The notes under the pieces are model-generated. The model saw only the letters and a list, made by a program, of their open reading frames with translations, did not search any database and had not been told where the DNA came from. The position numbers and the translations under genes are program-made. From Selaginella moellendorffii (taxonomy: Eukaryota; Plantae; Lycopodiophyta), in assembly GCF_000143415.4 (NCBI RefSeq), contig NW_003314267.1, positions 2,893,839 to 2,957,838 of the forward strand: a stretch of DNA of 64,000 nt. Direction: 5' to 3'. Below are positions 45,270-64,000 of the stretch, piece after piece. The first letter of the stretch is position 1; every line of letters starts with the position of its first letter.

Positions 45270-45402
45270 TTAAGAAAGAAAAAGATTTGACCTTTAGATC
45301 CCAGCGGTCCGAATGGGCGGTCCTTAAACTTTTGCCCCTTCGCAACTGCCGTGCGTTCAGCTGGCACAGATTTAGGGCTCTCAACTAGCGCAGCACATCA
45401 GG

Positions 45403-46975
45403 ATGGTGCGGCGCGACAAATATGTCAAGGCCATGCCTGGCTACGGCGGCCATGTGCCCTGCATGCGCAACCACATTGTGGGGAGGAGTTTCTCGGATTC
45501 CACAGTCCGTGCGTCGCAGTGCGAGAAGGCGTTTCGGCGGGATGATTATGCGAGTGTGGCGCCTCTGGTATGTGTCGGCCGCTCATCACGCACAATTTAG
45601 CACGGAGACGATCGAAACCTTGCGGTGCTGTGGCAGACTGTCGAGTCCCGGCCGCAAGGGAGGGACTTTCTCTACGCCCAGACCGCAAAGACGGGATACG
45701 AGCTCCTGGACAAGAGGGCGCTGGAGCCTCGCATCAGCAAGAAGCGGCCATCCGGTGCGCTCTTCCATGCCACGGGGCGCCTGGATGTGCGCGGCATGGA
45801 GTGAGTAACGAGCACACCGGAAGTCATGTTTATAATGGACATGTTTCGTGCACAGGAAAGTGGCAGGAACCACTGAAGAGTGTGTCACCAAGACGGTCAA
45901 ATCTGCATCACTTCCCGTTGCACCATACAGAGATCCCACCCTGCAGCTGCGCAAGTCCTTCCACAAAATGAGCTTGGAACAGCCCGAGATCCCCACCGTC
46001 CCGGGCTACACAGGTCACCAGGTTCTCTCTCTCTCTCTCTGCATCAACACAACATGGATTCCACCTCTTTGTGATGCAGCATGGGTCCCAACACATATTC
46101 GGCAAATCTTATGGCTCAAGCAGACGAGAAATCATCACGGACCACTGTGTCCCAGACAAGCCCACTGTCAAGGAGCTCCTCTACTATTGGGACACGCGGC
46201 CTCAAGGCAAGCAGACCACCGACAAGCACAGGATACCCGGTTACCAGGTCTGATATGTATGTTACGTAGTGCAATCATCAAGAAACTTTGGCTTCTACGG
46301 CAGGGGTATATTCCCAGCAAGAGCAACCACGTCTTTGCTAAGACGGCCGGAGCGGCCTCAAACTTGGCTGCCTTGGCTGAAAATACGTTGAGAGAACGCA
46401 AGAATGCCGGCGGCCTGTACGAGCTTGTCGATAATCCACCACAGGTGAGCCATGCGAGGCATGCATGGGGCAAGCGTCTAACTCTGCTTGTTCCTTCCTC
46501 CAGGGCAAAGTCGACCTCTATGCACAAAGTCAGGAGCGCTTCTTCGAAGTGGAGCCTAGGCCCAACTACATAAGAGTGGACAAGAAAACGACCAGGGTAA
46601 GCAAGATTATATAGCGTGCTCCTTTATTTCTCTTGTGGGATCCATGCAGCCGTCCATGTTTGAGCTGAGGCCCGACTACAGGGTGAGGTTGAAAATCTTT
46701 GATGACACTCGACAAGTGATGGAAGGCAAGCACCATGTCACGGGATACACCGGGCACGTCCATGCATCACAGGTTCGCGTCTTCATCCTCGCTTTGTGTG
46801 CGTGCCGCTCAGACTCTACCCCTTTCCGTTGCAGCACTTGTACGCCAAGTCGTACGGCAAGATCTCCCGAACGCTGCATGAGAAGCCAGCTATCCCGGAA
46901 ACGTCGGAGCAGTACTTGAACTTCGCTGATTCTCGCGCGCTCGTAGATCAAGTCGACGACGTTACCATTTCATAG
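45403..46975 (+). CDS. PGYxGH-repeat protein (FAM166/PYG-repeat-like ciliary microtubule inner protein candidate)
   Basis: Four repeats after splicing: PGYGGHVP..IVGRSF, PGYTGHQ..IFGKSYG, PGYQGYIP..VFAKT, TGYTGHVH..LYAKSYG. Confidence 0.65.
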
Positions 46976-47019
46976 CACAGGACACGCTTTTGTACAAATC
47001 CAGAAAGACGAGTTTTGGT

Positions 47020-48455
47020 TCAAACCTGTTGCTTTCGGAGCATCCAGCCTTTGGCACGCTCTAGCATGGAATGCCCTGCTCAACAAATGGTCAGAGGTAA
47101 ACAGCTCAACACCGGCCTACGTACCTGGGTTGTTGTGTTTGGCTCCAAGGGATCCGTTGCCCGCGGACCAACTCCGCCTCAAACTGGTGTTGCTAGTAAG
47201 GAGGTTTTCCTTCTCCGAGTGCTTACGCCGCTTGGGTGAAGTCGACTTCGCTCTACTCGCGTTCTTGGACAGTTTAGAGTAGTGTTGACCACGCCCAACA
47301 CCTTGCCTCTTCTCCTGAGTCGCATCCTTGCACGTCTTCTTGCTTGCCTCTAACACCTTCAAAGGCCGCGGATTACTATGCTTCCAGCTATGGCCTGTGG
47401 CAGCGATCTCGGAGTGCTTGTCTCCACGAGAAAAGTGCGCTGGAGGAACCGGTAGCCGAGAACCAAGGGAATAAGTGGCTGTCTCCGTCGCGAGCCGTGG
47501 ACGAGTAACTGGTCTGTTCTTTGAGGGCAAGCGGTCAATCAGTGCCGGAAGCGACTTGACAGGAGATGTCTGTCCCTTCTTACCACGAAGCAATGGCACT
47601 TTCTGCGCTTTGTCCACTCCAGTCTTCTTAGCAGCTGGATGCTTGAACGGAGCTAATACCCTGAAATGCTTCGAGCTTGGCGGGCTTGTCGTCTCGTATG
47701 CAGGGTTTGGAAACATAACTGCATTCGACTGTGTGGACTTGATCTGCGATAACTTCCAACTCTTCTGAGCTTTTTTCACCTTTGTAACCTTCATGGATGG
47801 TGCCGCCGCTGGTGCTGGTGCCTGTACCGGTGCCGGTGACGCTACTGGCAGGGCGTTGAAGGTCTGAAGCTGTTCAATCTTGTCGAACTCCTGGATGCCC
47901 ACTCCGCTATGCAAAGTAGCCGAGGCATCCCCTTTGGTTTGGCTATCTGCATGACGCCTGTCACGCTGTTTACTTGCAGAACCCCGCCTTGCTTCAAACA
48001 GTTGCGATACCCCACCAGAGAGTTCCTTTGCGTTCTTGGCAGCCGCGAGAAGATCCGAGAGTACCCGATGCACAGACTCAGCCGATTCTGACCAGTGCGT
48101 CCACTCAGCTACATACATCACGAAGGAGAGAAGTGTAAACCAATGGATGCCAGACAAACATTTTGGCGACAAACCTGCATTGGATAGCTTCGCCATCGCA
48201 TCGTCATCGAGTCCAACTCTGCAGCAGAGAACACTGGGAAATCCTATACAGCACAGAAAAGCCGATACCTTTGGTCGCTTTTGGGGCTTTTGCAAGAAAC
48301 AGCCATCCTGGTGACCTCGATCGCGGTCTGCAGCTGCTGCAGCCGAGCTACAATCTCATCCACCTGCGCGACCTGAAGATTAGAGCCTTGCGAGCGAAGG
48401 AGGCGCTCACCTTGTCAAGGGCCCTCTGGATTGGCGGAGGCTGATGCGCTTCCAT
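47020..48455 (-). CDS. TANGLED1-like microtubule-binding division-site protein (divergent)
   Basis: Spliced N-terminus RALDK|VDEIVARLQQLQ...SPKS, then EWTHWS..VLSDLLAA, MFPNP, and a basic Ser/Pro-rich tail with LRRSWS; these resemble TAN1 motifs as I recall them. Confidence 0.6.
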
Positions 48456-48560
48456 GGACGCCGATCAAACTAGCCCTTCCGCCCTAAGCCTGGCTCGAGG
48501 TTTAAAATGGGGGCCTGCCCATTTGCCCTAGCCCAACGGCTCTATTTTGCTTTCGAGAGG

Positions 48561-49920
48561 ATGGATGCTGGATCGACGCTTGGTATGGTGAGAGAGGAGG
48601 ATTTCCTTGCGCGCAAGCTCGACATTCAGCTGGATTACTGGGCGGCGGAGAAATGGCAGCTGGAGAATCGACTTCTGGTGGTATGTTTTGTCGATTCATT
48701 CGAATGCTAGGGCTTAGGGGCTTCTCTTGCAGGGAGAGAGAGCTCACAGGCATACGGAGGCTTTTCAAAGCTATGAAAATGCGCAGCTTGCCCTCACACT
48801 GGGCCTTCAGCAGCACGAACTTTTTCTGAGCAAGCTCAAGCTGGGTATGTCAACGACGTACATCCTTCGCGCATGCTCAAAACCTTGCAATGACAGATAG
48901 CGTTGTGGACGATCTTACGCATTTCCAGACCCGAGTGACACTACTGGAGAGCCAAGTTCGACTAGAAAAGGTGCTTGCCTGGTTACTCCTTCGCTGTAAG
49001 ATTAATTGGCATACGTTACGCAGGAAAAGGTTGAGCGGCTCAAGCAGCAGCAGTCCCTCGGTGGACAATCCGTTTTAGCAACGAAGGAAGCGGAGTTTGT
49101 GGATAAGTTGCATGATGCATCACAGCAGATTCAGGATCTTCGGCAGGAAATCCACGGGTTGAAACTCGGCCATGCCACAGAAATGACCAAAGTTTCGAAG
49201 GAGTTGCAAGCTCTTCTCAGGGAAAGGGACTTCGTGTGGAATCAGCTGAAATGCTTGGAGGCCGATTTTTGCTGCCGCCTGAAAGAAAAAGAAGCGGTAG
49301 TGCTCGCTAGTCAAGAGGACATCGCGAAGCTTCGAGAGTGTAACGAGTTGGCGCAGAGAGTTGGTGATGAAAGAGCAGTGGAGCTGACGATAACGAAGAT
49401 GGAATTGAAGAAAGCAGAAGATGAGTCCCTGGAGATGAAAAATATGGTTGCCGAACTCATGTCAGAGAAGGTGCAAACAAGCGCAAGCGATGAGCTACAA
49501 AATGCGTACAGAAGGCTTGAGGAGGTAAGGCTGGAAAATAGGAACCTGAAGGAGTTGTATGCTGAACTGGAGGCCAAGCATGACGAAAAAATGGTTCGCA
49601 GATTTAATTTGTCTGCTTGCTTTTCTTACTGTTCTGTTTCTTCCAGAGGCTGGACAAACCCGTGAAAACTGGAAAGAAGGACGTCACTACGCGCAACTTA
49701 TCGTCAGAAATGGAGGCCGCCGCAGGAGAGTCTGGGCAATGCAAGCGCTTGCGCTCGCGCTCTCGAAAAGCCAGAGGAGAAGGGGTACACCTCCCTTCAA
49801 GCAAAGTTATACTTTTTCTAACACAAAATGCAGGAGAAGACTGCAAAGCGCACCAATCGTGGTGAGAACACTGGAAAGCGACGCCAGGTAGTGAGAAGTG
49901 CGCATGAAACACTCATCTGA
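48561..49920 (+). CDS. Uncharacterised coiled-coil protein (ends approximate)
   Basis: 219-aa heptad-rich exon (49006-49665) with LLRERDFVWNQ; GT-AG flanked small exons. Confidence 0.6.
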
Positions 49921-50076
49921 CTATTTAATTTATAGAACAAGACTTCAAGCTCCAGTGGCGGAAGGGTTCTAAGAGCAAGAGACTCGAGTGGCAGTGCCAC
50001 AAACACTAGCTTTTTCTCAGCCTCGTTTAGTATTCCAAAGGTAAAGAATACACTCGCAGCGGTGAGATAACAACGA

Positions 50077-52308
50077 TCATGACAAAGAAATCTTCCTCTT
50101 GGGCAGTCGTCTTCGTAAAATAGATGAGCCGGTGCCTTCAACTACTTGACTTGTGCTCAGATAGGGGCACATGTATCCTTCCACCTGGTTTGTTAATTAT
50201 ATAACAACATTCTCTCTGTTGAAGCTACAACGAACCTGTAGTAGAGTAGCAGGAACGTCCACGCGACCTTGCAGTATAGTGTCCACTCCCTCGAGGACGT
50301 TTGGCGAGCATGGCGTAAGTATGTACAAGATGCGCCGGTCAGCATCGATAGCCCGGACAATACCTGAAAAAGGGGCAGGGGGACAGCTCACTCGAATGCT
50401 AGCTGAAGAAACGCCGCTCACCGAAACCAACGCATGGGGGTTGCTCTTCTCCTCTGTGAGAGCTGGTAGCCAAACCAACAAGTTGAGCATTCAAGCCGAA
50501 CAACTTCTGAGATACTGGGACCTGTCCAAATCGTATACAAGAGTTGAGTTTACATGGAAGACCAGTCTGGAAGTCTCAACCTGGACATGAAGATGCACGA
50601 TGTTGAGATCATCCGCTGAAACTTGATAAGGAACCTGGCAGGCTAGTGTTCTTGCAACTTCCTCAAATCGAAGGCCAAGCGAAGAATCGATTCTATCGTA
50701 ATCATGGAAGTAATGCACCACTCTGAGAGCTCTAAGCTGAGCAGCCGTCCTGACAGCACTAGGCAAAAATTAGTTCCACATGATGACGAATGCGAAAGGC
50801 GCTGAGTGGGCATACCGGTCAGGCTCAGTCGAGCAGGAGAAAGCGCGTTCTAGATGAAGGACGGAGGCAATGTCATCAGGCAGCGGCGGAACACTCTCAT
50901 CGTCTGCGGAGTGGATCTCTACCACATGCGTGGGCGTCGAATAACGCAGTATATCAACCAAGAGGTCGTATCCGACACCTTTGGAACGCAAAGTTAGAAT
51001 ACATGACAAGCGAGAAAAATCCTGGACCTGCCCGCCATCCAAGCGAGTTGATGACCAGCGGAATCTCAAGCGCGGCCCGTCGAAAAGAGTCGTAAAGATC
51101 CTTGAAGTATTTGACATATGCCTTTGGATCCGATTGTGGAGTTATGTCACCGTAGAAGAAGCACCTGAAAGATGCGGGTATGCGGGTCGGAAACGCAACA
51201 TGAAAGTCGGAAAATATCATAAAACCTTTGCGGGACACGTAGATGTGAGACGGGAGAGCCTGCAATGAAAAGCATGAGAAAAGGAACGATTCCAGAAGCG
51301 CTGATCCTTGCCAGTGATCGGTTCTTCAAGAACGTGAAGTGATAAGCATCCTGGGATTGTAAACTCTGGCTGGCCAACGTCGGCGTCGAGATATGCAACA
51401 GCTTTGTACCTGCATGAGCATGAGCGAGCCAGGTCTAAGACAAATCAAGAATCCACCTGGTCAGCAATCTGTTGACGAGGAAACGGGCAAAAGTCGACTT
51501 TCCCACGCCTTTCCCTCCGCAGACTGGAACAACAGGTGGAAGCCTGTCACATACGGACATTATCAAGTCGGCAGTGGACGACCACTCGCAAGGTATAATG
51601 GTCGGCCGCATGCGCTTCTGAGCTCCTTCCACAACATCACTGCTTATTTGTTTCCTTTTCCTGGATTCAGCATTTTGGTCAGAAGATGAGCGGGAGTCAT
51701 CGACAATTTCCTGCAAACAGAAGACTTAAGGAGTGCCGGTCTATGTAACACAACTTACGAGAGTAAAAGACAGCGAGTCGTCATCCGGCTGCTCGAGGCT
51801 GCAGGAGCTGAAACGGAGGACGCACCCGCCTTGGCTCGTCTGGAATGTTAAAGCCGAGCATAGCGTCGAGCAAGATTTCACAAGAACTTCCGTGGCCCGA
51901 ATAAGGGAGTAACCATGCATGGAAGCACTTCCTTCGGTCAGGCACACCATGGCACACCCATCAAACGCAAGAGTCTGCCAGATGCACAAGCGATCATGGG
52001 AGCGTCTCTCGTTGCTTGCGTACCTGGTTGGCCGCAAGCCGGACTATGGCTTTGTTGTCGTCCACAAGTTGAACGCTGCAGTAGAGTTAGGAGGTGGAGA
52101 ACAACCAGAGCACCAGTACCAACCTGACGGCCTCTTCACTGATGGGGTGAGCGTTGCTCGCGGCCGGGAAAACCGTGCGCCTTCTCGTCCGGTCTTGTTT
52201 GCTGGTAGCGTGGTCCGCTCGCTTGCGTTTGCATGGCAGGCCCTTGACAAAGCACCGAGCGGCGAGGTTGAGGAAAATGCTCCTGCTGTCGGGCAGGAGG
52301 CCTTTCAT
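50077..52308 (-). CDS. NOL9: NOL9/Grc3-type polynucleotide 5'-kinase (Clp1 family)
   Basis: Walker A CGGKGVGKSTF, YLDADVGQPEF, PLVINSLGW, GIVRAID; multi-exon; start inferred from Kozak-like CCACCGCCATG and a splice path into the conserved N-terminal domain. Confidence 0.85.
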
Positions 52309-52350
52309 GGCGGTGGTGGGAAAGAGGGGGGGAGGGGGTTACAAAAGCCC

Positions 52351-52628
52351 TTAGGCCTGGAGTGGTTTCTCGTACGTGTTCTGGTCCCTAAACTCCTGAA
52401 GCCGCTTCTGGATCATGTCCACCACATTGGGCTGCACGAAGATGTTAGTGTCATCCAGCACGTAGATGATAAACTGCTGGGCCGCGGGGAGCTGGTCGTT
52501 CATGTGAATGACAAACTGCGCCATGGGTATGTCGCTGCACGCACCACGGCCACGGCCATCAAGCGCAAAAAGCAGCGGGCAAGTGTGACGCACCAGCTCA
52601 CCAGGACGCCCTTGATCGCCTGCACCAT
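52351..52628 (-). CDS. TFB5: TFIIH subunit TFB5/TTDA, 2 exons
   Basis: MVQAIKGVLVSC|DIPMAQFVIHMN...FIIYVLDDTNIFV...FRDQNTYEKP. Confidence 0.92.
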
Positions 52629-52720
52629 GGCGCCGCCCACCCCGCGCACGCCTACCTATAAGCCCTAGCTCCTCCTAAAATCTCTGTACAAGAATAAGCC
52701 TAGCTAGTCCCCCCACTTTA

Positions 52721-53861
52721 TCACGGCTGCGACTTTGTGGGAAGGATGGTGTCCGCCAGCTCCCTGTTGATTGCAATCTGGAGCGGGGGCATGTGGCTCA
52801 TGATCCCCGATACATTAGACATCCTGCCAGGGAAAGAAAAGCTGGATTAAGTTCTTGCAAGCCAGAGCATGTATGTATGAATGTACCCGTCGAGGAGCGC
52901 TTCCAGGTTGTCCCGGAACTTGGCCAGGAGATCCGTGTTCTCCTGGGCCTGCATCGCACCGCCCTTGTCAAGAAGCAGGACGTCAAAAACAACAGCGACA
53001 TACCTTGCCAGCAGCCAGGTTGGCTCGTATCTGCACAACCACTTGGAGGTTTTGGTCAAACAGCTCCCCGGCGGTGCCACCGATTGCTGCGGGAAACAAG
53101 CACAACGTCAGGCATCGAGAGTGAAGCAAAGTGGACCAACCTTCGTTTGAAATACCATCGTCGGCATCAATAGGAAGGGGCGCGGTAGAGTACATGGGCA
53201 TGGAGCCGGTGTTGGTGCTCGTGTTGTTGTTGTTGTTGTTGCTGTTGCCGTTGCCGCCGGTCTTGGCCAGAGCTGCTGTTGATGGCTTCACGTCTACAGT
53301 CTTATCCTGCCCAACGACCAACCAACGATCCAACGAGGGCCAAAGAAAAGAGACAAGTGCTCACCTTCTTGTCCTTGGATTTCTTGGAAGCGTTGTGTTG
53401 TTCTTCGGCCTTCCTCCGCTTGCCGACCTCCTTCTTCTGCAAAGCCCCCACAAGTCAGTGTGAGCTCCCTGGACAAAGGAAGAAAACAACTCACGGCCAT
53501 CCATCGGCATCGCAGAGCAACGTCCCTCACGCTCTTGTCCGACAGAAGGGCTGCGATCTTGATGTACTTCCACACGCCTGCCTCACTCCCAAAGCTGCAA
53601 GGAGAGCACACAGACAGAGGTTACGAGGAGGAAATACATGGAGAAAGGGACTGACGTGTGGAGGCTCTCGTCCAGAATGGATTGCTCCTCGGCGCTCCAC
53701 TCAACAGCCAGGCCTGGATTGTGAAGAAGTTGGTGCTTGGAATCTGCGGGCGTTGGTGCTGCGCATGGTGGAGGAGGAGGAGGGGGATGAGTGCGAGCTC
53801 CATTGGCCATGGCCGTAGCAGCAGACTCCGATTTTACGACAAGGCCAACAGCAGTAGCCAT
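52721..53861 (-). CDS. DUF3755 / SANT-Myb-like protein
   Basis: HNPGLAVEWSAEEQSIL, YIKIAALLSDKSVRDVALRCRWM, C-terminal MSHMPPLQIAINRELA. Confidence 0.85.
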
Positions 53862-53884
53862 TGTCCTATACTATTCCCGCCATA

Positions 53885-53900
53885 GCCCTAGCTCTAGGGC
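53885..53900. promoter_or_regulatory. Inverted pair of GCCCTAG (telo-box-like) motifs in a 67-bp divergent promoter
   Basis: GCCCTAG-CT-CTAGGGC between the ATGs at 53861 (-) and 53929 (+). Confidence 0.55.
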
Positions 53901-53928
53901 AGAGTAAAGGGGAAGGATATACTTTACG

Positions 53929-54876
53929 ATGGCCTCCTCCTCCTCTTCCACTGACACATCGCCCCTGGTAACTTCTCGCAGCGCCCAGAGCTCCGAGCAG
54001 GTGCTGTGCCGGATCTGCTTAGACTCGACAGGTGAGTGAGCGCGAGCGAGTCGCGATCTAGGTTATACAAATTATTCATTTCGTTCAAATTTTGATCAGG
54101 CCATGACTTAATCGCACCTTGCCGCTGCAGAGGGACTCAGAAGTTTGTCCACAGGTCTTGCCTCGATAGCTGGAGAGCCGCCAAGGTGAAGCCTCGCTCA
54201 CCATTTTCATTCGTGAATCGTCACTCAAACGGAGCGTGCAGTGCAGGAAGGATCCGCATTCTCACGCTGCACGGAATGCCGAGCGACGTTCCACCTGCGA
54301 GCCAATGTGCCACACGACAGATGGTGGCGAAGGCTCAAGTTCCAGCTGCTGGTGATGAGAGATCACGCCGCCATCGTCCTGGCTGCTCAGCTGGTAAGCC
54401 TTTGGACAATGCATGCCCCGAGGCTTGATAGCCTACACTCCTTGCAACAGGTTGTGGCATTTCTGGGCCTGGTGGTGTACCTGCTGTATGGGAGGGAGCT
54501 TAAGGAGATGTTTGGATACTCGCGGCATCCTTACGGCTTCTATTCACTTGCAGGTTCGTTCGTGCTTGCCACTCCAAGGGAAACAAAATCTAGCTTTTCT
54601 TCCCTCAGTTGTCGTGGCCCTCCTCTCGGGACTATCGTACGGATTCTTCGTTTCCATCATCTGCGGCCAACGAATCAGCAACCGGCACTACCACGTCCTT
54701 GCAAAGCGCGAGCTGTCTCAAGTAAGTAACTTGTCATCTATAACAAGGTTATAGCACTTGGCTGAATTCACTTCAAGCAGGAATACGTGGTGCAAACAAT
54801 CAACGATGGAGAAGAGGCACCGCCTAGCTTAGATCCCGTGCACGTCAATGAGCTCAAACGCCTTGGCCTCTACTGA
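53929..54876 (+). CDS. RING-CH (RINGv/MARCH-type) membrane E3 ligase
   Basis: CRICL...LIAPCRCRGTQKFVHRSCLDSW...CTEC followed by TM helices and HYHVLAKREL. Confidence 0.9.
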
Positions 54877-54942
54877 AAGTTGGGAAGTCTATTTTTTGAT
54901 GATACAATGTATATCTGCAGAACGGAGAATGGAATGTTGGTG

Positions 54943-57900
54943 TCACATTCTGTCTTCCTGGAGCGCCTTTTGAACAAGCTCCTTCTGCTCACGGCTATGC
55001 ACACTGCCGAACCCCGTCGCAGTTGCTGCAGAGGGAGGCCTTCCCACGTACTTGAGGTCCTCGAAGCTGCCATGCTCCACGGAAACCATGGCAGTTGCCA
55101 AGCGAGGAGCCATGTAGGGAAATGCACCCATATTCATCGGCTCCTCTTGGCACCAAACAACGTCCGCATCTACGCACACACCCGAGTTTGAAAAAGAAGA
55201 TAAACTGGCTGGCTTACTTGGATATCGCCTGAGTTCTCGTTGGAGGAGGTCGTAAGGAACCGGGCAAAGCTGCTCCACGCGGCAAATGGCTACGTCTTTG
55301 GCACCAACACGCTGCTTTTCCTCGTCCAGCTCATAGTACACCTAGACAAGCACACGCTATAGGCTCACCGTCTGGCCTCGCAAAATTTACCTTTCCAGAG
55401 CAGAGAACGAGGCGACGAACCCCCGACTCCACTTCAGCATGGTTGTTTTGGTCCTTGATCAGTCGCTTGAATCGGGTGCCTTGCTTATCAAACCCAGGAT
55501 GTCCCTCAACATCGTTAAATTCGGACAGACTTGACCGACACGCCTGGTGGCGCAGTAAATTTTTTGGCGCCATGACGACAAGAGGTTTCCTAAAGTCCCG
55601 ATGAATCTAAGCGGCGAACAAAAGAGCGAGTGATATAGCTCACGATCATAACACCTAGTGCTTACCTGCCGGCGGAGTACATGGAAGTAATTGGCAGGAG
55701 TTGTCACGTTCATCACCTGCCAGTTGCATTCTTGAATCTGTTTGCGAAGGGACACCTCCATCTCAGGAATGACGAATGGATTGTCATCGCTCATCTGCAG
55801 TCATGTTTAGCAATCCCAAGATGCATCGAAAGCTTGTATTACGAAACCTGTAGAAATCTTTCCAGCCTCGCACTCGAGTGCTCTGGTCCCTGCCCGTCAT
55901 AACCGTGTGGCAGCAGGACGACCAGGCCCGTCTGACGCAACCATTTTGCTTCCCCGCTGCTCAGAAACTGATCGAAGATCACCTGGCAACCGTTGGAAAA
56001 ATCTCCAAACTGGGCCTCCCAACAAACCAACGAGTTTGGGTTCTCCATCGAATACCCAAGCTCAAACCCAAGCACTCCAAACTCCGACAGTGAGCTGCAT
56101 GCACCACATGTTATCAGTACCTACGGAAGGTAGAAGTACGAGCCCACCTGTTACTGACTGTAAACATTTCGTCCTCCTGATTCTTCACCACATGGTTCAG
56201 AGGGCAATACTTTTCGCCAGACTTCTGGTCGTGTACGACAGCATGTCTGTGGCTGAATGTGCCTCTCTCAACGTCCTGACCGCTCAGGCGGACATGGTTG
56301 CCCTCGGCAAGCAGCGTCGCAAAGGCCAAGGCTTCTGCAGTCGCCCAGTCAACACCTTCTCCCGTCTCAATCATCTGCGCACGTTGCTCGTATACTTTCT
56401 TGATCGCTCTGTGTGCCGTGAAAGTTGGAGGTAGCGTGGTGATCGCCTTGCCAAGGTTCTTCAGAATCTCCGGCTTCACACTGGAGTGGTCATCACATGC
56501 GGGTGTGATCACAAATCCACCCTTACCCCGTGTTTCGTAGCCTGGACAGCTGCTCCGGGCCTTTGAATCCTGTCCAATATGCTGCAAGCCAGTCTTGTGT
56601 CTTTGGGATATAGTCTTTGCTGCTCTGAAACTCTTCGTTCAAGATCGCCATCACCTTGTCGTGCACCCTTGCAATGTCCTCCTTTTTCAGCTGCCCGACT
56701 TGGGCCAGCTTCTTCTCGTAGATGTCGAGAGAAGTGGGGTGGCCCTTGATGACCTGCCAGAGTACGCACACACGTCAAGGGACATGTGCATGCAAGATAC
56801 CGCAGACGTACCTGATACATCTTAGGCTGAGTGAAGTTCGGCTCGTCGATCTCGTTGTGACCAAACCGGCGGTAGCAAACGATGTCAACGACGACATCCG
56901 CCTTGAAGTGGCATCTCCACTCCGCCGCCATCGCACAGGCGTGGACAACGGCCTCCACATCGTCGCCATTGACGTGGAAAATGGGAGCGTTCAAGGCCTT
57001 GGCAACGTCGGTGCAGTAAGGAGAGGAGCGACTGCTCTTGGGGTCGGTGGTGAAGGCCACCTGATTGTTGACGACGATATGAATGGTACCGCCAGTTGTG
57101 TAGTTGGGAAGGTCGCTCAAGTGCAGCGTCTCGTACACCACACCTTGCCCCGAGAAGCTGCCGTCGCCGTGGAGCAAGACGGCCATGTTTCTCTTGCGCT
57201 CGACGTCTTGCGAGTAGTACTGCTTGGCCCTCGTCTTTCCGATGACAACCGGGTCCACGGCTTCCAGGTGGCTTGGGTTTGCAACGAGCGAGAGGTGAAT
57301 CCTCTTACCGCTGCGCGTTGGCCTGTCGTAGGAAGTGCCCAGATGGTACTTGACGTCACCACTCCCGGTGTAGCCACCTTTCTCGACGTCGGCGGGCCTT
57401 ATCCCGGCACTAAACTCGCTGAAGATGTGCCTCAGCGGTTTCCTCACCACATTACCCAGCACGTTGAGCCGACCCCTGTGAGGCATGCCAATGACAATGC
57501 TGTCCACGCCCAGGTCGGCGGCCCGGTCGATGAGCTCTTTCATTCCCGGGATGAGCGTCTCGCAACCCTCGAGGCCAAAGCGCTTGGCAGCAGTCCACTT
57601 TTGCGCCAGGAAGTTCTCAAAGCGCGTCCCCCAGATGAGGCGATCCAGGATGATGGCCTGCTTCTCCCGCGAGTAGTTGCTGGGGACGTGCTGCTCGATC
57701 CTCTCCCGCAGCCAGTTACACTTGTCCCTGTCCGGGATGTGCATGTACTCGTAGCCAATGCTCCCGCAGTATGCCTGCTCTAAACGCCTGAGAATGGCCC
57801 TCAGCGTCTGGACAGGGCGATTCTCGGACAAGAAGCCCGACATCCTCCACACCCCGATGAAAAACTCCCGGTCCAGGTCGGCATCCGTGAATCCATATAG

Positions 57901-58353
57901 AGCCGGGTTGAGGTCCTGCGGGGGCACGCGCTGCTCCAGCCCCAGGGGATCCAGCTGCGCTTTGATGTGACCATTCACCTGGTAAGCTCTCAGCAGCAGC
58001 AGCAAGCGCATGCTCTCTTGGATCGTCTGTCCCGACAGGCCGGGACTGGATGCCGCCTTGCCCGTGAAATTCCGGAAGAAGTTGTCCCACGACTCGTCCA
58101 CGCTCCTGGGATCCGCCTCCCACGCGCGCTGGAGCTCTTCCAAGTAGACGCTGCTGGTGCCGTCGAGGAAGTTGTCAGTGAGGCGGGAGAGAGGGATGGA
58201 GCGGGGCGCGGGCGGCTTTTGCATCCACCGCGGGCTCCCACGGAAATGCACCGCGTCTCTTTTGGCTCGAGGCGGTCTAACAATCGTATGGAAGGATCCA
58301 GTCTCGACGCGCAGCCACGGCAACACAAGCCTGGACGAGACCCTCGCCGCCAT
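54943..58353 (-). CDS. OGDH: Mitochondrial 2-oxoglutarate dehydrogenase E1
   Basis: [58 protein letters not shown]. Confidence 0.97.
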
Positions 58354-58371
58354 CGCAAGCCCTAAATTATT

Positions 58372-59507
58372 TCATTTGTCATTCTCCCGCGCAACAAGCC
58401 TTTCACCAAAGGCCCGCGCAAGCATGTCCTTGGGCTCAATCCCCCACCCCACGCTCGCCTCGTACGCCGCCACCACCGAGTCTGGAGACACGACGAGCCC
58501 CTGCGAGGCCAGCGCTCTCACAGCGTTGCCCACCCGGCAAATCCTCTCCCTGGTTGCCAGCGGAATCGGGATCGCCGGCCCATCCTCCTGCTGCTGCTGC
58601 TGCTGCTGCTGTTCACGCTGTGCAACGCTTGATATCCACACGTAGCCGTTGCACCCAAAGATAACTTCCACCTGGTACTGCCCAAAGCTGTGAAAGTGCT
58701 GGCTCAAGCGCTTGATGAGGTAAGGCTCAACCTTGACAAGCTGGCCCATTTGCAGCTGCCAATCCGGATAGAACGTCAGCCCCAGATTCGTGCTGCTTGT
58801 TTTCTTGCTTACCTTGCCATACTTCAAGCTCCGGGTGTGGAGGTGGATGGAGTCCTGGCTCGCAGATTGCACCTCAGCCTGCATGCATCGATAAGTCTCC
58901 ACAAAACAAAACTAGCACATACACTGATGAGGTCACCTTCTACAAACACAGAACGCATATTGAGCTCGTCGGTGGCCGTCCGCCGCCTCTGCAGGAGATG
59001 CGCAATGTAGTATATAGCAGTGCGGAATGCGGATGATTTACCTGGATTCCACCTGGTAAATTCACCGCGGACAGCATGAGATGTGCGTCCTGCTTGGAGT
59101 TGACATCCACCTTCCATCGCTTTTGGGCAAGCTGGAAACAAGTACGAGTCAGCCGATCACCTCTCCAACGGTTCAACCAACCTCGGTGACTCGGCCGATG
59201 ACAACATCTCCAACCCGTGCTTCGTACCTTGTGTCGCCAAGGTTGACAAAGACTACATCGGCTCTCTACAATACAAGAGTGCCCTACCTGGAACGAAGCG
59301 GCTTGACAAACACGAGCTTGTTCACCCGCTCGACAGTGCCGCAAACAGTGGCTACCAGCTCCCCGTCTACAAGCTGCGTTCCGTGCCCTCTAAAAGAACA
59401 AGCATGGCTTCAAGGGTTGCCTGGAAAGAGGCCGCCTCCTTTTACCTCAGGATTCCGTCCTGGTGATCCACCTGGATCACATCTCCAATCGCGACCAGCG
59501 CCCGCAT
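58372..59507 (-). CDS. RRP4: Exosome component RRP4 (S1/KH)
   Basis: LRGHGT, CGTVERVNKLV, YEARVGDVVIGRV, LSAVNLPGG, IFGCNGYVWI. Confidence 0.92.
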
Positions 59508-59515
59508 CCTTGTCG

Positions 59516-59524
59516 AAACCCTAG
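59516..59524 (+). promoter_or_regulatory. Telo-box AAACCCTA in the 41-bp RRP4/RTE1 divergent gap
   Basis: Canonical plant telo-box sequence (AAACCCTAG). Confidence 0.6.
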
Positions 59525-59548
59525 CCCCGCTTTAGGTCGCGCGCAGGC

Positions 59549-60285
59549 ATGGCCATGGATGCGGTGGCGCTCACCGTGGGCGGCAATGCGGCGGCGGCGG
59601 CGCCGGTGGATGCCGAGCGAGCGCGCTTCCCGCACTGCGTGGTGTGGACGCCATTGCCCATCGTCTCGTGGCTGTCGCCGCTCATCGGCCACGTAGGGAT
59701 CTGTCGCGCCGACGGTGTCATCCTCGACTTCGCCGGCCCCTTCTTCGTCAACGTGGACGGCTTCGCCTTCGGCTCGCCCGCAAAGTTCCTCCGCCTCGAC
59801 CCCGACCAGGTGCGTAGTGACATGTTGCAGCTAACCGCATGACACTGGTTGCTGCGCAGTGCTGCTTCCCCGCATTCGCCTTGTCGGGGCACCGCTGCCG
59901 GGAGGCGTTCCGGCACTCGCAGCTGGGTACCGCCAGCGACTGGGACGACGCCCTGCGCAGCTGCATGCACAAGTTCCAGCACAAGACGTACAACTTCTTC
60001 ACCTGCAACTGCCACTCGTTCGTCTCCACCTGCCTCAACCGCGCCGCGTACCAGGGCCGCACCGACTGGAACATGATCCACATCGTCGCCCTGGTGCACT
60101 GCCGCGGCCACTGGATCGGCCCCGCCGCGCTCCTCAGGTCGCTCGCGCCTTTCGTCCTCGTCCTCTGCATCGGCCTCCTCACCGCCGGCTGGCCCTTCCT
60201 CGTCGGCTGGGCGCTCATCTCCTCGCTCCTGGCGGCATGGTTCGTGTTCGCCACCTGTTGCGCCCGCGGCGTCGCCGACTGCTAG
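59549..60285 (+). CDS. RTE1: RTE1/RTH (TMEM222-family) ethylene-signalling membrane protein, 2 exons
   Basis: [36 protein letters not shown]. Confidence 0.92.
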
Positions 60286-60350
60286 CCCGAGGCCCGGGCT
60301 TTTTTAGGGCTCCCTCCCGGCTTCTCGTGCCTAGGGCGCACCCACACACC

Positions 60351-60924
60351 ATGTTCTATGGCGCAGCGGTGTGGGATCCGTGGCTCATTGTGTCGCAGAT
60401 CGTCTGCATCCAGTGCCTGAGCTATGTCAGCCTTGGCGCGCTGCTGTGGGCATTCGTGGGAGTCCAGGTACCGAGGTTTACGCTCCACTTCTTCTTCGAC
60501 CACACGCTGCTCTCCTTCTCCTCCGCCACCGGCTGGTGCCTCATCTCGGCCTTCATCCTCAACTCGCTCCTAGTGTAAGTGCCTGCCCCTCCCCTCCAGA
60601 TCCACACAAACAAATCTCTCATTCTCCCTTTTAGAGCTGCCTACCTGTTCGTGCTGGTGGAGAGGGCCAAAAAGTGCCTGGATTTCTCGGCCACTGTCTA
60701 CATTATTCACTTGGTCTTGAGCTCCATCTACGGGGGATTCCCGCTAACTGTGACGTGGTGGTTGCTCATGGGGACGTGCTTGGCCGTCACTGCCCTCCTT
60801 GGCGAGTGGCTCTGCCTCAGGCGCGAATTGAGGGACATCCCCATTAGAACGGCGCGTGCAAGTAAGACGGCGCCTCTTGTTGCTTCTCGTTCCCTAAGCT
60901 TTTCTTTTGTCGGCAGCTGTTTAG
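60351..60924 (+). CDS. SYS1: SYS1 Golgi membrane protein, 3 exons
   Basis: MFYGAAVWDPWLIVSQI, VERAKKCLDF, GEWLCLRRELRDIP. Confidence 0.92.
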
Positions 60925-61017
60925 CAACGAGACGGAAGACCTCCATTCTTTTCCCACCACAACGACAGGCGCGTGTAAACTACTACCTAGGTAGCCAGAG
61001 ACACTTCGATTCAGTAG

Positions 61018-62196
61018 ATGGCGGCGGCGATTTGCTCCAGCGGCAGCACAGGCGCCGGGAGTGGCACTTCTCGTGCAGTGGTGTGCGGTGCGGGCGTTAT
61101 CGGTACCTGTACCGCTTACTTCCTGGGGAAGAGGGGCGTCAAGGTGACGGTCGTGGACAGCTGTGGCGTGGCTACGGCAGCATCGGGTAAGGCTGGTGGC
61201 TTCCTTGCTCTCGACTGGTGCGATGGTTCTCCGGTCGGGAACCTGGCGCGAGCAAGCTTTGCCCTGCACCGGCAGCTTGCAGACGAGCTTGGCGGCGAAA
61301 CAAATTACGGGTACAGAAGGCTGGATGCGCTGAGTGTCACTGTCAAAGAGCCTACAGGGACAACAGGTGCAGGAGCTTCCGCCTCTCTTCCATCGTGGAT
61401 CGATGGTGCAATCAGGAAATCCAGTTCCATCGGGAGCCAGGCAACTACAGCTCAGGTCCATCCTCAGCTCTTCACTCGGACCGTCATGTCCCGTGCCGAG
61501 TCTGACTTTGGAGCCGAGTTCCTCAAGGGTACTGTGCGAGAGATCAGAGTCGACCCCGAGACGGCCCAGGTTTCAGGGGTGGTGGTTGATGACAAGTTTG
61601 TGGAAGCGGAGACGGTGGTGATTGCTCTCGGCCCCTGGTGTGGAAAGCTAAAGCTTGTGACCGACTTAACAAGCATTTCGGGGCTGAAAGCACACAGTAT
61701 TATCCTGCAGCCTCGTGAGGGACGGGACATCTCCCCGCACGCTTTGTTCCTCAGTTTCACCTCTAGGGAGGGTGAAACCATGGATCCAGAAGTGTATCCA
61801 CGTCCCACCGGGGAAGTCTACGTGTGCGGTATGTCGGAGCATGTGGAACTTCCTCCAGATGCGGACCACGTCGAGCCCAAGGCCGAAGCGATGGACATGT
61901 TGAAGCGAGTTGCTGGGGCCGTGTCGAGTCAGCTGGATGGCTGCCCAGTCAAGGCTCAGCAGGCGTGTTTCCTGCCGCTCTCGGTTGACGGTGTTCCTCT
62001 CATTGGAAAGCTTCCTCACGCAGCCGGTGTCTACTTGGCAACCGGCCACAGCTGCTGGGGAATCCTGAATGCACCGGCGACCGGTGCAAGTCTAGCGGAG
62101 CTCATTGTCGAAAGCCATTCTACGACAGTGGATCTCAAGCCCTTCGACCCGGCTAGATTTCTCACCGCAGAGAAAGGGAGAAGAAAGTTTCTTTGA
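61018..62196 (+). CDS. FAD-dependent oxidoreductase (DAO family, TDA3-like), intronless
   Basis: VVCGAGVIG, AASGKAGGFLA, ATGHSCWGI. Confidence 0.9.
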   Translation: MAAAICSSGSTGAGSGTSRAVVCGAGVIGTCTAYFLGKRGVKVTVVDSCGVATAASGKAGGFLALDWCDGSPVGNLARASFALHRQLADELGGETNYGYRRLDALSVTVKEPTGTTGAGASASLPSWIDGAIRKSSSIGSQATTAQVHPQLFTRTVMSRAESDFGAEFLKGTVREIRVDPETAQVSGVVVDDKFVEAETVVIALGPWCGKLKLVTDLTSISGLKAHSIILQPREGRDISPHALFLSFTSREGETMDPEVYPRPTGEVYVCGMSEHVELPPDADHVEPKAEAMDMLKRVAGAVSSQLDGCPVKAQQACFLPLSVDGVPLIGKLPHAAGVYLATGHSCWGILNAPATGASLAELIVESHSTTVDLKPFDPARFLTAEKGRRKFL

Positions 62197-62302
62197 TCAG
62201 ATTACCAGTCTTCCCCACTCCAGCAAGGCCCTCCAGAGTGATGAAGAGCGCCTGCTCTCTGCTAATCCCACTAGATGCGAAAGTGGTGGGGATGGTATGT
62301 AT

Positions 62303-63551
62303 CTAGGCCCACTCACCATGAAACAGTGGTTTTCTAATAACATCCGATTCTATATCCACCATCTTAGCGATGTCTGCGCACAGCTTGGTGTCGTAATCCT
62401 CGGGCTGTAGCTCCACTCCCAGCTCCTTGTCAATGTCATCTGATGCGGGTACGAGGATGAACTCACAGCCTTCGTAATTAAGAAGATCTGGAGGATGGAC
62501 CGGCACAAACCTGTAGGACCCCATGAGCGCTTGCAGCTTGGCGGGGTACATTGCTTTTCTCTTGTTACCCAAGCCTGCATTCGGCGGTGCTCCAGCACTA
62601 GGATTCTTTGCCTGAAAGAAACTCAACCTTAGCATCCATCTATCTACCTACGAACTTCGAGTCGAATCTCACTGAGATAATAAAGGAGGCCTCCTTTTCG
62701 AGATTCAATTCCTCCTGCAGAGCAGTGTGTTCCTCCTTGGGTTTGTCCAGCTTGTATATGAGGTGTGTGTGATTCTTGTGCTTTAGAATGCAGTAAACGC
62801 CTTCCCCTGCCGGACGGGCTCCTGGCTGGACCCGGTGCCCGCGAGTCTTCGTGTCATATTCATCTGGCATCTGGTTTCAGAAGAGAACGCAATAATGGAA
62901 ATGTAGCTTACGAGCCGAAAGGCTGTCTTTCATCGCTTGGATGGAAGTCGTGACCAAGTCCACGTAGCTCCACGCCGGACGACCTTTTGCAGCGGGATCA
63001 GGCAAGACCTTCCGTCCTACTATTATCAGTCTCATCAGCAAGCGTGTTGTCAAATCCACCTCCTGCACGAAGTGATCGATCAGGAACCATGGATAACATA
63101 AAAGATGGTCAGGTCAACACACCTGCATGCCCTGCTCCCCTGGTTTATCATCCTTGATCTCCTCCCGTAGCTCCCCGGCAGACTTCTCATCTCCGTTGCC
63201 ATCCCTGTCACCTTCTTTAGGTGTCCCCTTCACATTAACCGTGCGCTGGATGTCGTCAGCTTCTTTCTTTCCTTCGACAGCGTCCTTGGACTCTTCCAGC
63301 GTCTCCTTCACATTCTCCGAATGTGGATCTTGCTTCACTTCCAGGCTGTTATCGGCTGCGACTGGGCGGAGAACCATGTAAAGACGCTGTACCTCTCCGG
63401 CTGAGTGTGGATGCTCCACGTCAATCTTCGGGCGGTAAAAGAAGAAAATCTCCCCTATTTCCTGCCAATGTTTCGACGCATGTGTCAACATAAACAAATC
63501 GTGGTAACATACCGACACTTCCAAATCACTTCGGTTCTGCAACTTCTCCAT
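62303..63551 (-). CDS. Conserved uncharacterised protein, multi-exon
   Basis: Spliced globular blocks GEIFFFYRPK, QRLYMVLRP, RLIIVGRKVLP, ARPAGEGVY, HTHLIYKL, LLNYEGCEFILV. Confidence 0.75.
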
Positions 63552-63773
63552 GTTGTTTCTTGTCAGGAACAGAAAGAAGAATACTTGCCCCGGCCCTCGG
63601 GACCCTTCACTTGCTAGTATAAGATAGAGACAAGTGTCTTGCGTACGTGTCATGCAACCAGAATTTCAAGAAACAACCTTCATTGGAGGCGGCCCATTTA
63701 TTTCAGCTGCAGCTTGACACACACCATCAAAACTTTTAGAAATCTCGAAATCTAAAACAACAAGAACCTCTCC

Positions 63774-63969
63774 TCAATCGCTATCGCTGTCTTGACTTCC
63801 ATTCAGGTAGTCCAACAAAACTTGACTCGCCAGTTTGTGCACGCTAAGACCCTTCTCATCCGCCTGCTTCTCCAATGCAGCATGGACATCAGAGTCCAGA
63901 AGAATGCGTGACCTTCCAGTACGAGGTCCTTTGTAAGTTTCGATGTGACTTTTTAGTACATCAAATCCC
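63774..63969 (-). CDS. Last exon of a gene extending beyond the window; ribbon-helix-helix-like C-terminus
   Basis: Acceptor ...TGCAG then GFDVLKSHIE...RSRILLDSDVHAALEKQADEKGLSVHKLASQVLLDYL...stop. Confidence 0.55.
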
Positions 63970-64000
63970 TGCATCGAAGACATTATTCAGCAACAATACC

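What the first reader, a model, noticed from the sequence alone, without database searches (positions are those of the whole stretch)
58340..58385. RRP4 stop codon only 18 bp upstream of the OGDH E1 start: candidate dicistronic unit in a land plant
Seen: on the minus strand RRP4 ends ...RENDK-TGA (58374-58372) and OGDH begins ATG at 58353; the spacer is AATAATTTAGGGCTTGCG. Both termini look native: the RRP4 KH domain is complete and OGDH has a transit-peptide-like N-terminus. Known: polycistronic nuclear mRNAs occur in green algae and only rarely in angiosperms (e.g. CDC26-TTM3). Inference: 18 bp cannot hold a 3'UTR, promoter and 5'UTR. Either one mRNA encodes both proteins, or OGDH initiates inside RRP4's last exon while RRP4's 3'UTR runs through OGDH coding sequence.
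Basis: partly seen in the sequence, partly recalled or inferred. Interest (0 to 1): 0.8.

Follow-up and report, generated by a model that had tools for sequence, protein, structure and literature searches.

The report
RRP4 and OGDH genes 18 bp apart
In the spikemoss Selaginella moellendorffii, an RNA-exosome gene (RRP4) stops 18 bases before a mitochondrial enzyme gene (OGDH E1) starts, but this sits in a run of extremely tightly packed genes and most likely means overlapping separate messages, not one message making two proteins.

Summary
On the minus strand RRP4 ends ...RENDK-TGA at 58374-58372, the spacer is AATAATTTAGGGCTTGCG, and OGDH E1 starts with ATG at 58353. Both ends are native by homology. 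The junction is identical on both haplotype scaffolds of Selaginella moellendorffii, where public annotation already lists the two genes 18 bp apart. RNA-derived contigs from four runs cross the spacer without a splice.

Those contigs cannot show a single molecule, because the same contigs also fuse RRP4 with the opposite-strand neighbour.

Three results argue against a working dicistron:
- RRP4 is a 271-codon ORF with 12 internal AUGs, which is the chance level, and an A at -3. The leaky-scanning signature of algal bicistrons is therefore absent.
- There is no structured or known RNA element at the junction.
- All 15 consecutive CDS-CDS junctions here are 120 bp or less, including divergent and convergent ones that cannot be polycistronic.

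Best reading (about 0.6): separate overlapping transcription units. OGDH would start inside RRP4's last exon or the spacer, and the RRP4 3'UTR would lie in OGDH exon 1. A functional dicistron stays possible (about 0.1).

The scan has flagged similar tight pairs elsewhere in this genome. Long-read RNA, CAGE and 3'-end data would decide.

The parts
58372..59507 (-). RRP4 (EXOSC2 homologue) gene, from ATG 59507 to stop 58374-58372. Seven coding exons: 59507-59446, 59389-59285, 59224-59182, 59131-59042, 58988-58922, 58877-58813 and 58755-58372. Product is 271 aa.
   Evidence: Splice joints with CT..AC ends (GT..AG on the minus strand) in RNA contigs of three runs. Exon lengths sum to 816 nt, giving one ORF with a single terminal stop. 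Pfam KH_6. Match to human and yeast RRP4. Public 271-aa model carrying S1_RRP4 and KH_6.
58372..58755 (-). RRP4 last exon (KH domain and C-terminal helices). It contains a polymorphic (CAG)n run at 58576-58620. It is the inferred site of the OGDH promoter or 5'UTR.
   Evidence: Exon boundary from the joint 58755/58813. A 3-nt CAG indel separates the haplotypes. The promoter role is inferred, not shown.
58354..58371 (-). 18-nt spacer AATAATTTAGGGCTTGCG between the RRP4 stop and the OGDH start. It is A/T-rich at its 5' end (AAATAATTTA when the last A of the stop codon is counted). It contains no stop in the RRP4/OGDH frame.
   Evidence: The spacer is identical in both haplotypes. The OGDH ATG is in frame 0 of RRP4. 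No contig shows a splice ending at the AG at 58363-58362.
56810..58353 (-). OGDH E1 exon 1. It encodes the presequence (about 54 residues before the conserved LSRLTD), the 2-oxogl_dehyd_N domain and most of the E1_dh domain.
   Evidence: The first intron joint is 56751/56810. Haplotype indels of +12 nt (after 58347) and -6 nt (about 58268-58273) both preserve the frame.
54943..58353 (-). Whole OGDH E1 coding span (1014 aa, spliced).
   Evidence: Public model at L005 10001-13411, mapped to the window. P0002 carries four Pfam domains. Introns are seen as joints.
58105..58353 (-). Inferred RRP4 3'UTR lying inside the OGDH presequence and N-terminal coding sequence.
   Evidence: This is weak evidence. 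The contigs that cover the spacer (X1 58105-58575, depth 61.8; X4 58197-58575, depth 23.6) are 6-10 times deeper than the next OGDH contigs (5.8-10 and 3.7-4.5). Contig depth is a single figure per contig, and the X4 contig end at 58197 coincides with a heterozygous site, so this is only a hint. No poly(A) end was seen.
59549..60285 (+). Divergent neighbour, an RTE1-family gene. Its ATG lies 41 bp from the RRP4 ATG. It has one intron at 59807-59856.
   Evidence: PF05608 RTE1 on the haplotype-2 model. A GT..AG joint at 59806/59857 sits in the same contigs that carry spliced RRP4.

Best explanation
These are two separate but overlapping transcription units in an ultra-compact gene island of Selaginella moellendorffii. 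RRP4 and OGDH E1 are independent, intact genes.

OGDH transcription starts inside the RRP4 gene, most likely in its last exon or at the spacer, so the OGDH core promoter is embedded in RRP4 coding sequence. RRP4 mRNAs are cleaved and polyadenylated downstream of the OGDH ATG, so their 3'UTR is made of OGDH presequence coding sequence. Some read-through RRP4-OGDH molecules probably exist as by-products, but OGDH protein is made from its own capped mRNA.

Shown here: the anatomy, the native ends of both proteins, RNA coverage across the spacer, the lack of leaky-scanning features, and the regional compaction.

Inferred, not shown: the position of the OGDH start site and of the RRP4 poly(A) site.
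For: 1. Regional rule. In the public gene calls around the pair, all 15 consecutive CDS-CDS junctions are 120 bp or less.
- Tandem junctions: 120, 93, 18, 92 and 42 bp, plus one annotated overlap.
- Divergent junctions: 41, 67 and 51 bp, plus one annotated overlap.
- Convergent junctions: 96, 106, 66, 6 and 102 bp.
- Divergent and convergent pairs cannot be polycistronic, so overlapping UTRs and promoters inside neighbouring genes are needed there anyway.

2. Direct sign of overlap. Single RNA contigs in three runs contain spliced RRP4 (minus strand) and the spliced RTE1-like gene (plus strand) across the 41-bp head-to-head gap.

3. Translation logic.
- RRP4 is 271 codons with 12 AUGs between its start and the OGDH AUG. 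Shuffles expect 12.3 +/- 3.2.
- Its start has A at -3, while the OGDH AUG has G at -3 and G at +4.
- Algal bicistrons depend on a weak ORF1 context and AUG depletion (PMC11291117).
- In Arabidopsis read-through bicistrons, ORF2 is rarely translated and the RNAs are NMD targets (PMC9768141).

4. No RNA element at the junction. There is no Rfam match, and the fold z-score of -0.74 is ordinary.

5. Contig depth drops 6-10 fold about 170-270 nt past the RRP4 stop in two runs. This fits a normal-length RRP4 3'UTR, but it is weak evidence.

6. OGDH is a conserved housekeeping enzyme with an intact presequence maintained in frame in both haplotypes.
Against: - No read-level evidence was available. 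All four runs are stored as contigs, so no start site, poly(A) site, strand or single-molecule span could be seen.
- A start site more than 28 nt upstream of the OGDH AUG would put small upstream AUGs in the leader (positions 806 and 813 of the spliced RNA).
- No TATA-like element sits at a suitable distance upstream of the ATG.
- The scan reports other tight tandem pairs in this genome whose follow-ups leaned towards shared mRNAs. Polycistrony may therefore be more common in this species than in angiosperms.
- A second OGDH paralogue with a normal 538-bp upstream region exists. This copy would therefore not need efficient translation.
Confidence: 0.6

Rival explanations
1. This is a true functional dicistronic mRNA. 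One capped, polyadenylated RNA carries RRP4 and OGDH. OGDH is translated from it by termination-reinitiation across the 18-nt spacer, or by internal entry.
For: - The 18-nt spacer is identical in both haplotypes.
- RNA contigs join spliced RRP4 exons to OGDH codons without a break. X3 record 9 does so directly, and X1, X4 and X17 contigs cross the spacer.
- The OGDH AUG has a strong context and follows closely on a stop codon.
- Other tight tandem pairs were flagged in this genome.
Against: - The contigs also fuse opposite-strand genes, so they do not prove one molecule.
- ORF1 is long, at 271 codons, with 12 internal AUGs and no depletion. That rules out leaky scanning (criteria from PMC11291117).
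- Reinitiation after long ORFs is inefficient, and ORF2 is rarely translated in plant read-through RNAs (PMC9768141).
- There is no structured element or known RNA family at the junction.
- RRP4 is not followed by OGDH in three other plant contigs, and the paralogue lacks the arrangement.
Confidence: 0.12
2. The two genes share a promoter and differ by alternative splicing. Both would be transcribed from the RRP4 start site, and OGDH mRNA would arise by splicing from an upstream RRP4 donor to the AG inside the spacer (58363-58362), removing most of RRP4.
For: The spacer contains an A/T-rich tract followed by AG just before GGCTTGCGATG. This kind of arrangement is known for some tight gene pairs (background knowledge).
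Against: - No joint ending in or near the spacer appears in any of four runs, while all RRP4 and OGDH introns do appear.
- Splicing from the exon-1 donor would leave the RRP4 AUG as an out-of-frame overlapping upstream ORF (sequence reasoning).
- Contigs drop rare isoforms, so absence is not proof.
Confidence: 0.05
3. OGDH transcription starts downstream of ATG 58353, for example about 30 nt after the A/T-rich spacer acting as a TATA-like box. The protein would then start at Met44 (58224) without a presequence, and the real intergenic distance would be about 150 nt.
For: AAATAATTTA is the only A/T-rich element in a G+C-rich stretch. No other AUG lies between 58335 and 58224.
Against: - The first seven residues match the conserved land-plant OGDH N-terminus.
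- Haplotype indels of +12 and -6 nt in the first 90 nt keep the frame.
- A Met44 start would leave only 11 residues before the conserved LSRLTD and no mitochondrial presequence.
- The public model uses ATG 58353.
Confidence: 0.05

Closest known systems
Overlapping transcription units of compacted eukaryotic genomes (microsporidia, nucleomorphs, prasinophyte algae)
   Same: Coding sequences are separated by tens of bases whatever their orientation. UTRs and promoters must therefore lie inside neighbouring genes, and RNA assemblies bridge adjacent genes. Overlapping transcription in such genomes is discussed in PMC2387174 and PMC3629993, found but not read in full.
   Different: This is a free-living vascular plant with a genome of about 100 Mb and large repeat blocks. 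Compaction is local, in gene islands next to repeat-rich DNA. Published averages for Selaginella gene-rich regions are about 1.1 kb of intergenic sequence (S. lepidophylla, PMC5750206), far more than the 120 bp or less seen here.
Green-algal nuclear bicistronic mRNAs translated by leaky scanning (Chlamydomonas, Auxenochlorella; PMC11291117)
   Same: Two unrelated ORFs lie on one strand with a very short inter-ORF. The algal inter-ORFs are often under 100 nt, and one used experimentally is 14 bp.
   Different: Algal ORF1s have weak start contexts and few or no AUGs before ORF2. Here ORF1 is 271 codons with 12 internal AUGs, the chance level, and A at -3. A single-molecule transcript is not shown.
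Arabidopsis CDC26-TTM3 bicistron and the 271 Arabidopsis read-through loci (PMC9768141)
   Same: These are land-plant tandem genes whose RNAs can span both ORFs. Read-through past the first gene's poly(A) site is a plausible minor product here.
   Different: CDC26 is a very small ORF1 (from memory). The Arabidopsis read-through RNAs are NMD targets, their ORF2 is rarely translated, and most second genes have their own start sites. That pattern supports overlap rather than functional dicistrony for RRP4-OGDH.
Other tight tandem pairs flagged by this scan in S. moellendorffii (COX16/PIG-P 0 bp, APC15/Pol iota 26 nt, ASDURF/DUF177 11 nt, LpxC/PPR 17 nt, GCP1/GSH2 20 bp, TFB5/NOL9 42 bp)
   Same: Same genome and same kind of stop-to-start proximity, with RNA contigs crossing the joint. 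These are unverified AI notes.
   Different: Several of those have a micro-ORF upstream, which suits leaky scanning better. RRP4 is a full-size ORF1. I tested only TFB5/NOL9, and it also shows no AUG depletion (5 internal AUGs against 2.9 expected).

Membership tests
Nuclear bicistronic mRNA of the green-algal / CDC26-TTM3 type | Two complete ORFs on the same strand with a short inter-ORF | tested here: met
   The spacer is 18 nt and both ORFs are complete and native.
Nuclear bicistronic mRNA of the green-algal / CDC26-TTM3 type | Single capped and polyadenylated RNA molecules spanning both ORFs | tested here: inconclusive
   Contigs cross the spacer in four runs. The same contigs also merge opposite-strand genes, and no raw or long reads were available.
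Nuclear bicistronic mRNA of the green-algal / CDC26-TTM3 type | No independent transcription start for ORF2 | not testable with these tools
   This needs CAGE, 5'RACE or direct RNA reads.
Nuclear bicistronic mRNA of the green-algal / CDC26-TTM3 type | Depletion of AUG codons between the ORF1 start and the ORF2 start | tested here: not met
   There are 12 internal AUGs against 12.3 +/- 3.2 in shuffles, and seven of them are out of the RRP4 frame.
Nuclear bicistronic mRNA of the green-algal / CDC26-TTM3 type | Weak Kozak-like context at ORF1 and a stronger one at ORF2 | tested here: inconclusive
   RRP4 has ACAAGGAUGC (A at -3, C at +4). OGDH has CUUGCGAUGG (G at -3, G at +4). ORF2 is somewhat stronger, but ORF1 is not obviously weak. 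No species-specific consensus was built.
Nuclear bicistronic mRNA of the green-algal / CDC26-TTM3 type | Pairing conserved across species | tested here: inconclusive
   RRP4 is not followed by OGDH in three other plant contigs of unknown species (L003, L006, L007). The paralogue has a different neighbour. No other Selaginella genome could be searched.
Overlapping transcription units in a compacted gene island | Spacers too short for UTRs and promoter at junctions of every orientation | tested here: met
   All 15 consecutive junctions are 120 bp or less, including three divergent spacers of 41-67 bp and five convergent spacers of 6-106 bp.
Overlapping transcription units in a compacted gene island | RNA of one gene contains sequence of its neighbour | tested here: met
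   Contigs carrying RRP4 splice junctions continue into OGDH coding sequence and into the spliced opposite-strand RTE1-like gene. This is contig-level evidence only.
Overlapping transcription units in a compacted gene island | Separate start site of the downstream gene and poly(A) site of the upstream gene, mapped inside each other | not testable with these tools
   The only hint is a step in contig depth at about 58100-58200.
RRP4 / EXOSC2 exosome cap subunit | S1 domain followed by a KH (KH_6) domain, with a full-length match to solved RRP4 chains | tested here: met
   KH_6 E 4.9e-14. Match to human RRP4 at E 2e-15, up to its C-terminal region. The public 271-aa model carries S1_RRP4 and KH_6. 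It lacks the longer N-terminal domain (ECR1_N) seen in some hits.
2-oxoglutarate dehydrogenase E1 (OGDH) | 2-oxogl_dehyd_N, E1_dh, Transket_pyr and OxoGdeHyase_C domains, with an N-terminal presequence | tested here: met
   (E 2.5e-139 to human OGDH).

The most novel reading that the evidence does not exclude
OGDH E1, a core TCA-cycle enzyme, is translated in a vascular plant from an RRP4-OGDH dicistronic mRNA. Translation would occur by termination-coupled reinitiation across an 18-nt spacer after a 271-codon ORF. That mechanism differs from the leaky scanning of algal bicistrons. It would be one instance of a wider, undescribed set of stop-start coupled gene pairs in Selaginella.
Probability: 0.1. 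Interest if true: 0.8.

Novelty: new member of a known kind. Interest (0 to 1): 0.35.

Why it matters
If the overlap reading is right, this locus is a clean example of a plant core promoter and 5'UTR embedded in another gene's coding exon, with a 3'UTR made of a neighbour's presequence codons. It lies in a 23-kb stretch where 16 genes are separated by 120 bp or less. That degree of compaction is usually associated with microsporidia, nucleomorphs or picoalgae, not vascular plants. It raises questions about how termination, initiation and dual coding/regulatory constraints coexist. It also warns annotators and expression analysts that short-read counts for OGDH exon 1 and the RRP4 last exon are mixtures of both genes' RNA. 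If the dicistronic reading were right, it would extend functional polycistrony with a long ORF1 to vascular plants.

Tried and rejected
1. A 5'UTR intron ending at the AG in the spacer. No such joint appears in four runs, although every RRP4 and OGDH intron was recovered.

2. A downstream true OGDH start at Met44. Rejected on N-terminal homology and frame-preserving haplotype indels.

3. An earlier or later RRP4 stop. Rejected by alignment to human RRP4 and the 816-nt in-frame spliced model.

4. Mis-assembly. Rejected because both haplotype scaffolds and the RNA contigs agree.

5. An IRES-like or known RNA element. There is no Rfam hit at E <= 0.1 over 53500-61500, and the fold of 58290-58450 has z -0.74.

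6. A conserved island around the junction as a sign of a dual-use promoter. The 197 nt before the stop have no haplotype differences. The regional rate is about 2.7 events per 200 nt, and other 400-600-nt stretches without differences exist, so this is not significant.

7. Synteny in other plants. RRP4-bearing contigs L003/L004, L006 and L007 lack OGDH downstream. OGDH transcript contigs L001 and L009-L013 have ordinary 210-485-nt leaders with no RRP4 called upstream; only L001 was also checked with an RRP4 query, which found nothing. The species are unknown, so this says little about lycophytes.

8. Contig depth as a proxy for transcript ends. It gives only a hint, because depth is one figure per contig and the X4 contig end at 58197 coincides with a heterozygous site.

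9. Literature on Selaginella polycistrony, overlap or Iso-Seq. Nothing relevant was found.

10. One search failed because the search term was too long.

11. Exact-sequence look-up of the joined 271-aa RRP4 model was left out, because the joined model has no reference. Exons were joined only inside scripts, to check the frame and count AUGs.

Full report
**1. What is in the sequence**

Reading the minus strand, the RRP4 last exon ends ...GCG CGG GAG AAT GAC AAA TGA, with the stop at 58374-58372. Then come 18 nt, AATAATTTAGGGCTTGCG (58371-58354). Then ATG at 58353 opens a 614-codon ORF.

Pfam places KH_6 in the upstream ORF. It places 2-oxogl_dehyd_N (residues 60-97) and E1_dh (residues 243-514) in the downstream one.

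**2. Are the two ends native?**

RRP4:
- The last-exon ORF aligns with human RRP4 through the KH domain and the C-terminal helices, to within about 12 residues of the end of the human chain.
- Splice joints in RNA contigs define seven coding exons. Their lengths (62, 105, 43, 90, 67, 65 and 384 nt) sum to 816 nt and translate to 271 residues with one terminal stop.
- The public annotation has the same 271-aa product.

OGDH:
- The annotated S. moellendorffii protein P0002 (1014 aa, four OGDH domains) is 100% identical over residues 1-510.
- The first residues (MAARVSS...) align with the conserved M-G-W-x-R-V-x-S start of ten other land-plant OGDH proteins.
- The presequence is the shortest in that set, about 54 residues before LSRLTD.
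- The RRP4 TGA lies in the OGDH frame, so the ORF cannot extend upstream in this exon.
- Between the two haplotype scaffolds the spacer is identical. The two indels in the first 90 nt of OGDH are +12 and -6 nt, both frame-preserving. One of them also appears in RNA contigs of run X1.

An earlier RRP4 stop or a later OGDH start would have removed the anomaly. Both are rejected.

**3. Organism and prior annotation**

The window is Selaginella moellendorffii scaffold GL377571.1. On this scaffold, and on the other haplotype scaffold GL377582.1, the deposited gene calls already place RRP4 and OGDH 18 bp apart. They are L005 8847-9982 and 10001-13411, and L002 6001-7131 and 7150-10567.

The adjacency is therefore public as coordinates. 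I found no paper discussing it.

**4. RNA evidence**

All are stored as contigs. They derive from RNA, because every RRP4 intron and six OGDH introns are skipped with GT..AG ends on the minus strand.

Contigs cross the spacer unbroken:
- X1: 58105-58575.
- X4: 58197-58575.
- X17: 57822-58676.
- X3: a 2600-nt contig running from OGDH codon ~170 (57839), through the spacer and all spliced RRP4 exons.

No joint ends at the AG in the spacer, so a 5'UTR intron there is not supported.

The X3 contig, and the corresponding X1 and X4 contigs, also continue across the 41-bp head-to-head gap into the spliced plus-strand RTE1-like gene. That cannot be one mRNA. It shows that these assemblies fuse any transcripts that overlap by a k-mer. 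The contigs therefore prove that RNA covers the spacer and that neighbouring transcripts overlap. They do not prove a dicistronic molecule.

A weak hint comes from contig depth:
- The contigs covering the spacer have depth 61.8 (X1) and 23.6 (X4).
- The next OGDH contigs have 5.8-10 and 3.7-4.5.
- This would fit RRP4 3'UTRs ending about 170-270 nt past the stop.
- However, depth is one number per contig, and the X4 contig end at 58197 coincides with a heterozygous site.

No poly(A) tails or start sites can be seen in contigs.

**5. Could OGDH be translated from a dicistronic RNA?**

The best-studied eukaryotic bicistrons, in green algae, rely on leaky scanning. They show short leaders, a weak ORF1 start context and a depletion of AUGs before ORF2 (PMC11291117).

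Here the spliced RNA has 834 nt between the RRP4 AUG and the OGDH AUG. It contains 12 internal AUGs in all three frames, against 12.3 +/- 3.2 in shuffles. RRP4 has A at -3. Leaky scanning is therefore excluded in practice.

Reinitiation after a 271-codon ORF is expected to be inefficient. In Arabidopsis, read-through bicistronic RNAs are NMD targets and their second ORFs are rarely translated (PMC9768141).

There is no Rfam match over 53500-61500. The 161 nt around the junction fold no better than shuffles (z -0.74).

One curiosity: the OGDH AUG is in the RRP4 frame and the spacer has no stop, so read-through of the UGA would give a fusion protein. The chance of that arrangement is about one in four, and I attach no meaning to it.

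**6. The neighbourhood gives the most economical explanation**

In the 23.4 kb around the pair, 16 genes are called, and all 15 CDS-CDS junctions are 120 bp or less.
- Tandem: 120, 93, 18, 92 and 42 bp, plus one annotated 49-bp overlap.
- Divergent: 41, 67 and 51 bp, plus one annotated overlap.
- Convergent: 96, 106, 66, 6 and 102 bp.

Convergent and divergent pairs cannot share an mRNA. In this island, 3'UTRs and promoters or 5'UTRs must therefore routinely lie inside neighbouring genes. The 18-bp tandem junction needs nothing more than the same rule.

Published figures for Selaginella gene-rich regions are about 1.1 kb of intergenic sequence (S. lepidophylla, PMC5750206). This island is far tighter than the described average.

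The second OGDH paralogue (P0003, 88% identity) has an ordinary 538-bp upstream region next to a metacaspase gene. RRP4 is not followed by OGDH in three other plant contigs. The junction therefore looks like a local product of compaction, not an old conserved unit. No other Selaginella genome could be searched, so this is tentative.

**7. Verdict**

The headline reading, a dicistronic unit, is neither shown nor excluded, and it fails the testable criteria of known bicistrons.

My estimates:
- Separate overlapping transcription units, with OGDH starting in the RRP4 last exon or spacer and the RRP4 3'UTR inside OGDH exon 1: 0.6.
- Functional dicistron: about 0.12.
- Shared promoter with alternative splicing: about 0.05.
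- A start site downstream of ATG 58353: about 0.05.
- The rest is undetermined.

The scan has already flagged similar tight pairs elsewhere in this genome (COX16/PIG-P, APC15/Pol iota, ASDURF/DUF177, LpxC/PPR, GCP1/GSH2, TFB5/NOL9). Those are unverified notes. They suggest that the real question is genome-wide: are short tandem spacers over-represented relative to short convergent and divergent ones? I could not compute that here.

**8. Limits**

- No raw reads, strand information, start sites or poly(A) sites were available.
- Species labels of the comparison contigs are unknown.
- The joined RRP4 model was used only inside scripts, for frame and AUG counts, and was not sent to any search tool.

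Noticed in passing
window 44943-64000 (L005 4354-23411; the island continues beyond the window end): An ultra-compact gene island: 16 called genes in 23.4 kb, and all 15 CDS-CDS junctions are 120 bp or less whatever the orientation. This is far tighter than the about 1.1 kb average reported for Selaginella gene-rich regions.
   Followed up: partly
window 59508-59548: The RRP4 (minus) and RTE1-like (plus) start codons are only 41 bp apart. Single RNA contigs in three runs carry both genes spliced, so their 5' ends overlap head to head.
   Followed up: partly
window 50070-50077 (L005 18277/18284): NOL9 and a 418-aa gene on the other strand are annotated as convergent, with only 6 bp between their coding ends.
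   Followed up: no
window 52308-52628: TFB5 (72 aa, one 59-nt intron) ends 42 bp before NOL9. The spliced TFB5 RNA has 5 internal AUGs against 2.9 expected, so it shows no leaky-scanning signature either. From memory, the Chlamydomonas TFB5 homologue REX1-S is the first ORF of a known bicistron.
   Followed up: partly
window 60237-60285 (L005 8069-8117): The public models of the SYS1 gene and the RTE1-like gene overlap by 49 bp of coding sequence on the same strand. This is either a real overlap or a mis-called start.
   Followed up: no
window 57871-57993: The run X3 contig ('organism B') differs from the window at about 30 positions, mostly spaced by three, in this 120-nt stretch only. It is nearly identical from 57994 to 58755. 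This looks like a chimeric join with the OGDH paralogue or a gene-conversion tract.
   Followed up: no
window 58576-58620: A (CAG)n run encoding poly-Q inside the RRP4 KH-domain insert differs by one repeat unit between haplotypes. RNA contigs break there.
   Followed up: partly
window 58351-58374: The RRP4 UGA and the OGDH AUG are in the same frame with no stop between them, so stop-codon read-through would give an RRP4-OGDH fusion. This is probably coincidence.
   Followed up: partly
window 1-32000: The first half of the window has lower G+C (0.38-0.51) and a strong negative GC skew (about -0.2). The gene island at 32-64 kb has G+C of 0.50-0.59 and skew near 0. The first half is likely a repeat or transposon block flanking the island.
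   Followed up: no
L003 925-1836: An intronless 303-aa RRP4 gene, 65% identical to the Selaginella protein, sits next to DUF632 genes in Logan contigs from two runs of an unidentified plant.
   Followed up: no
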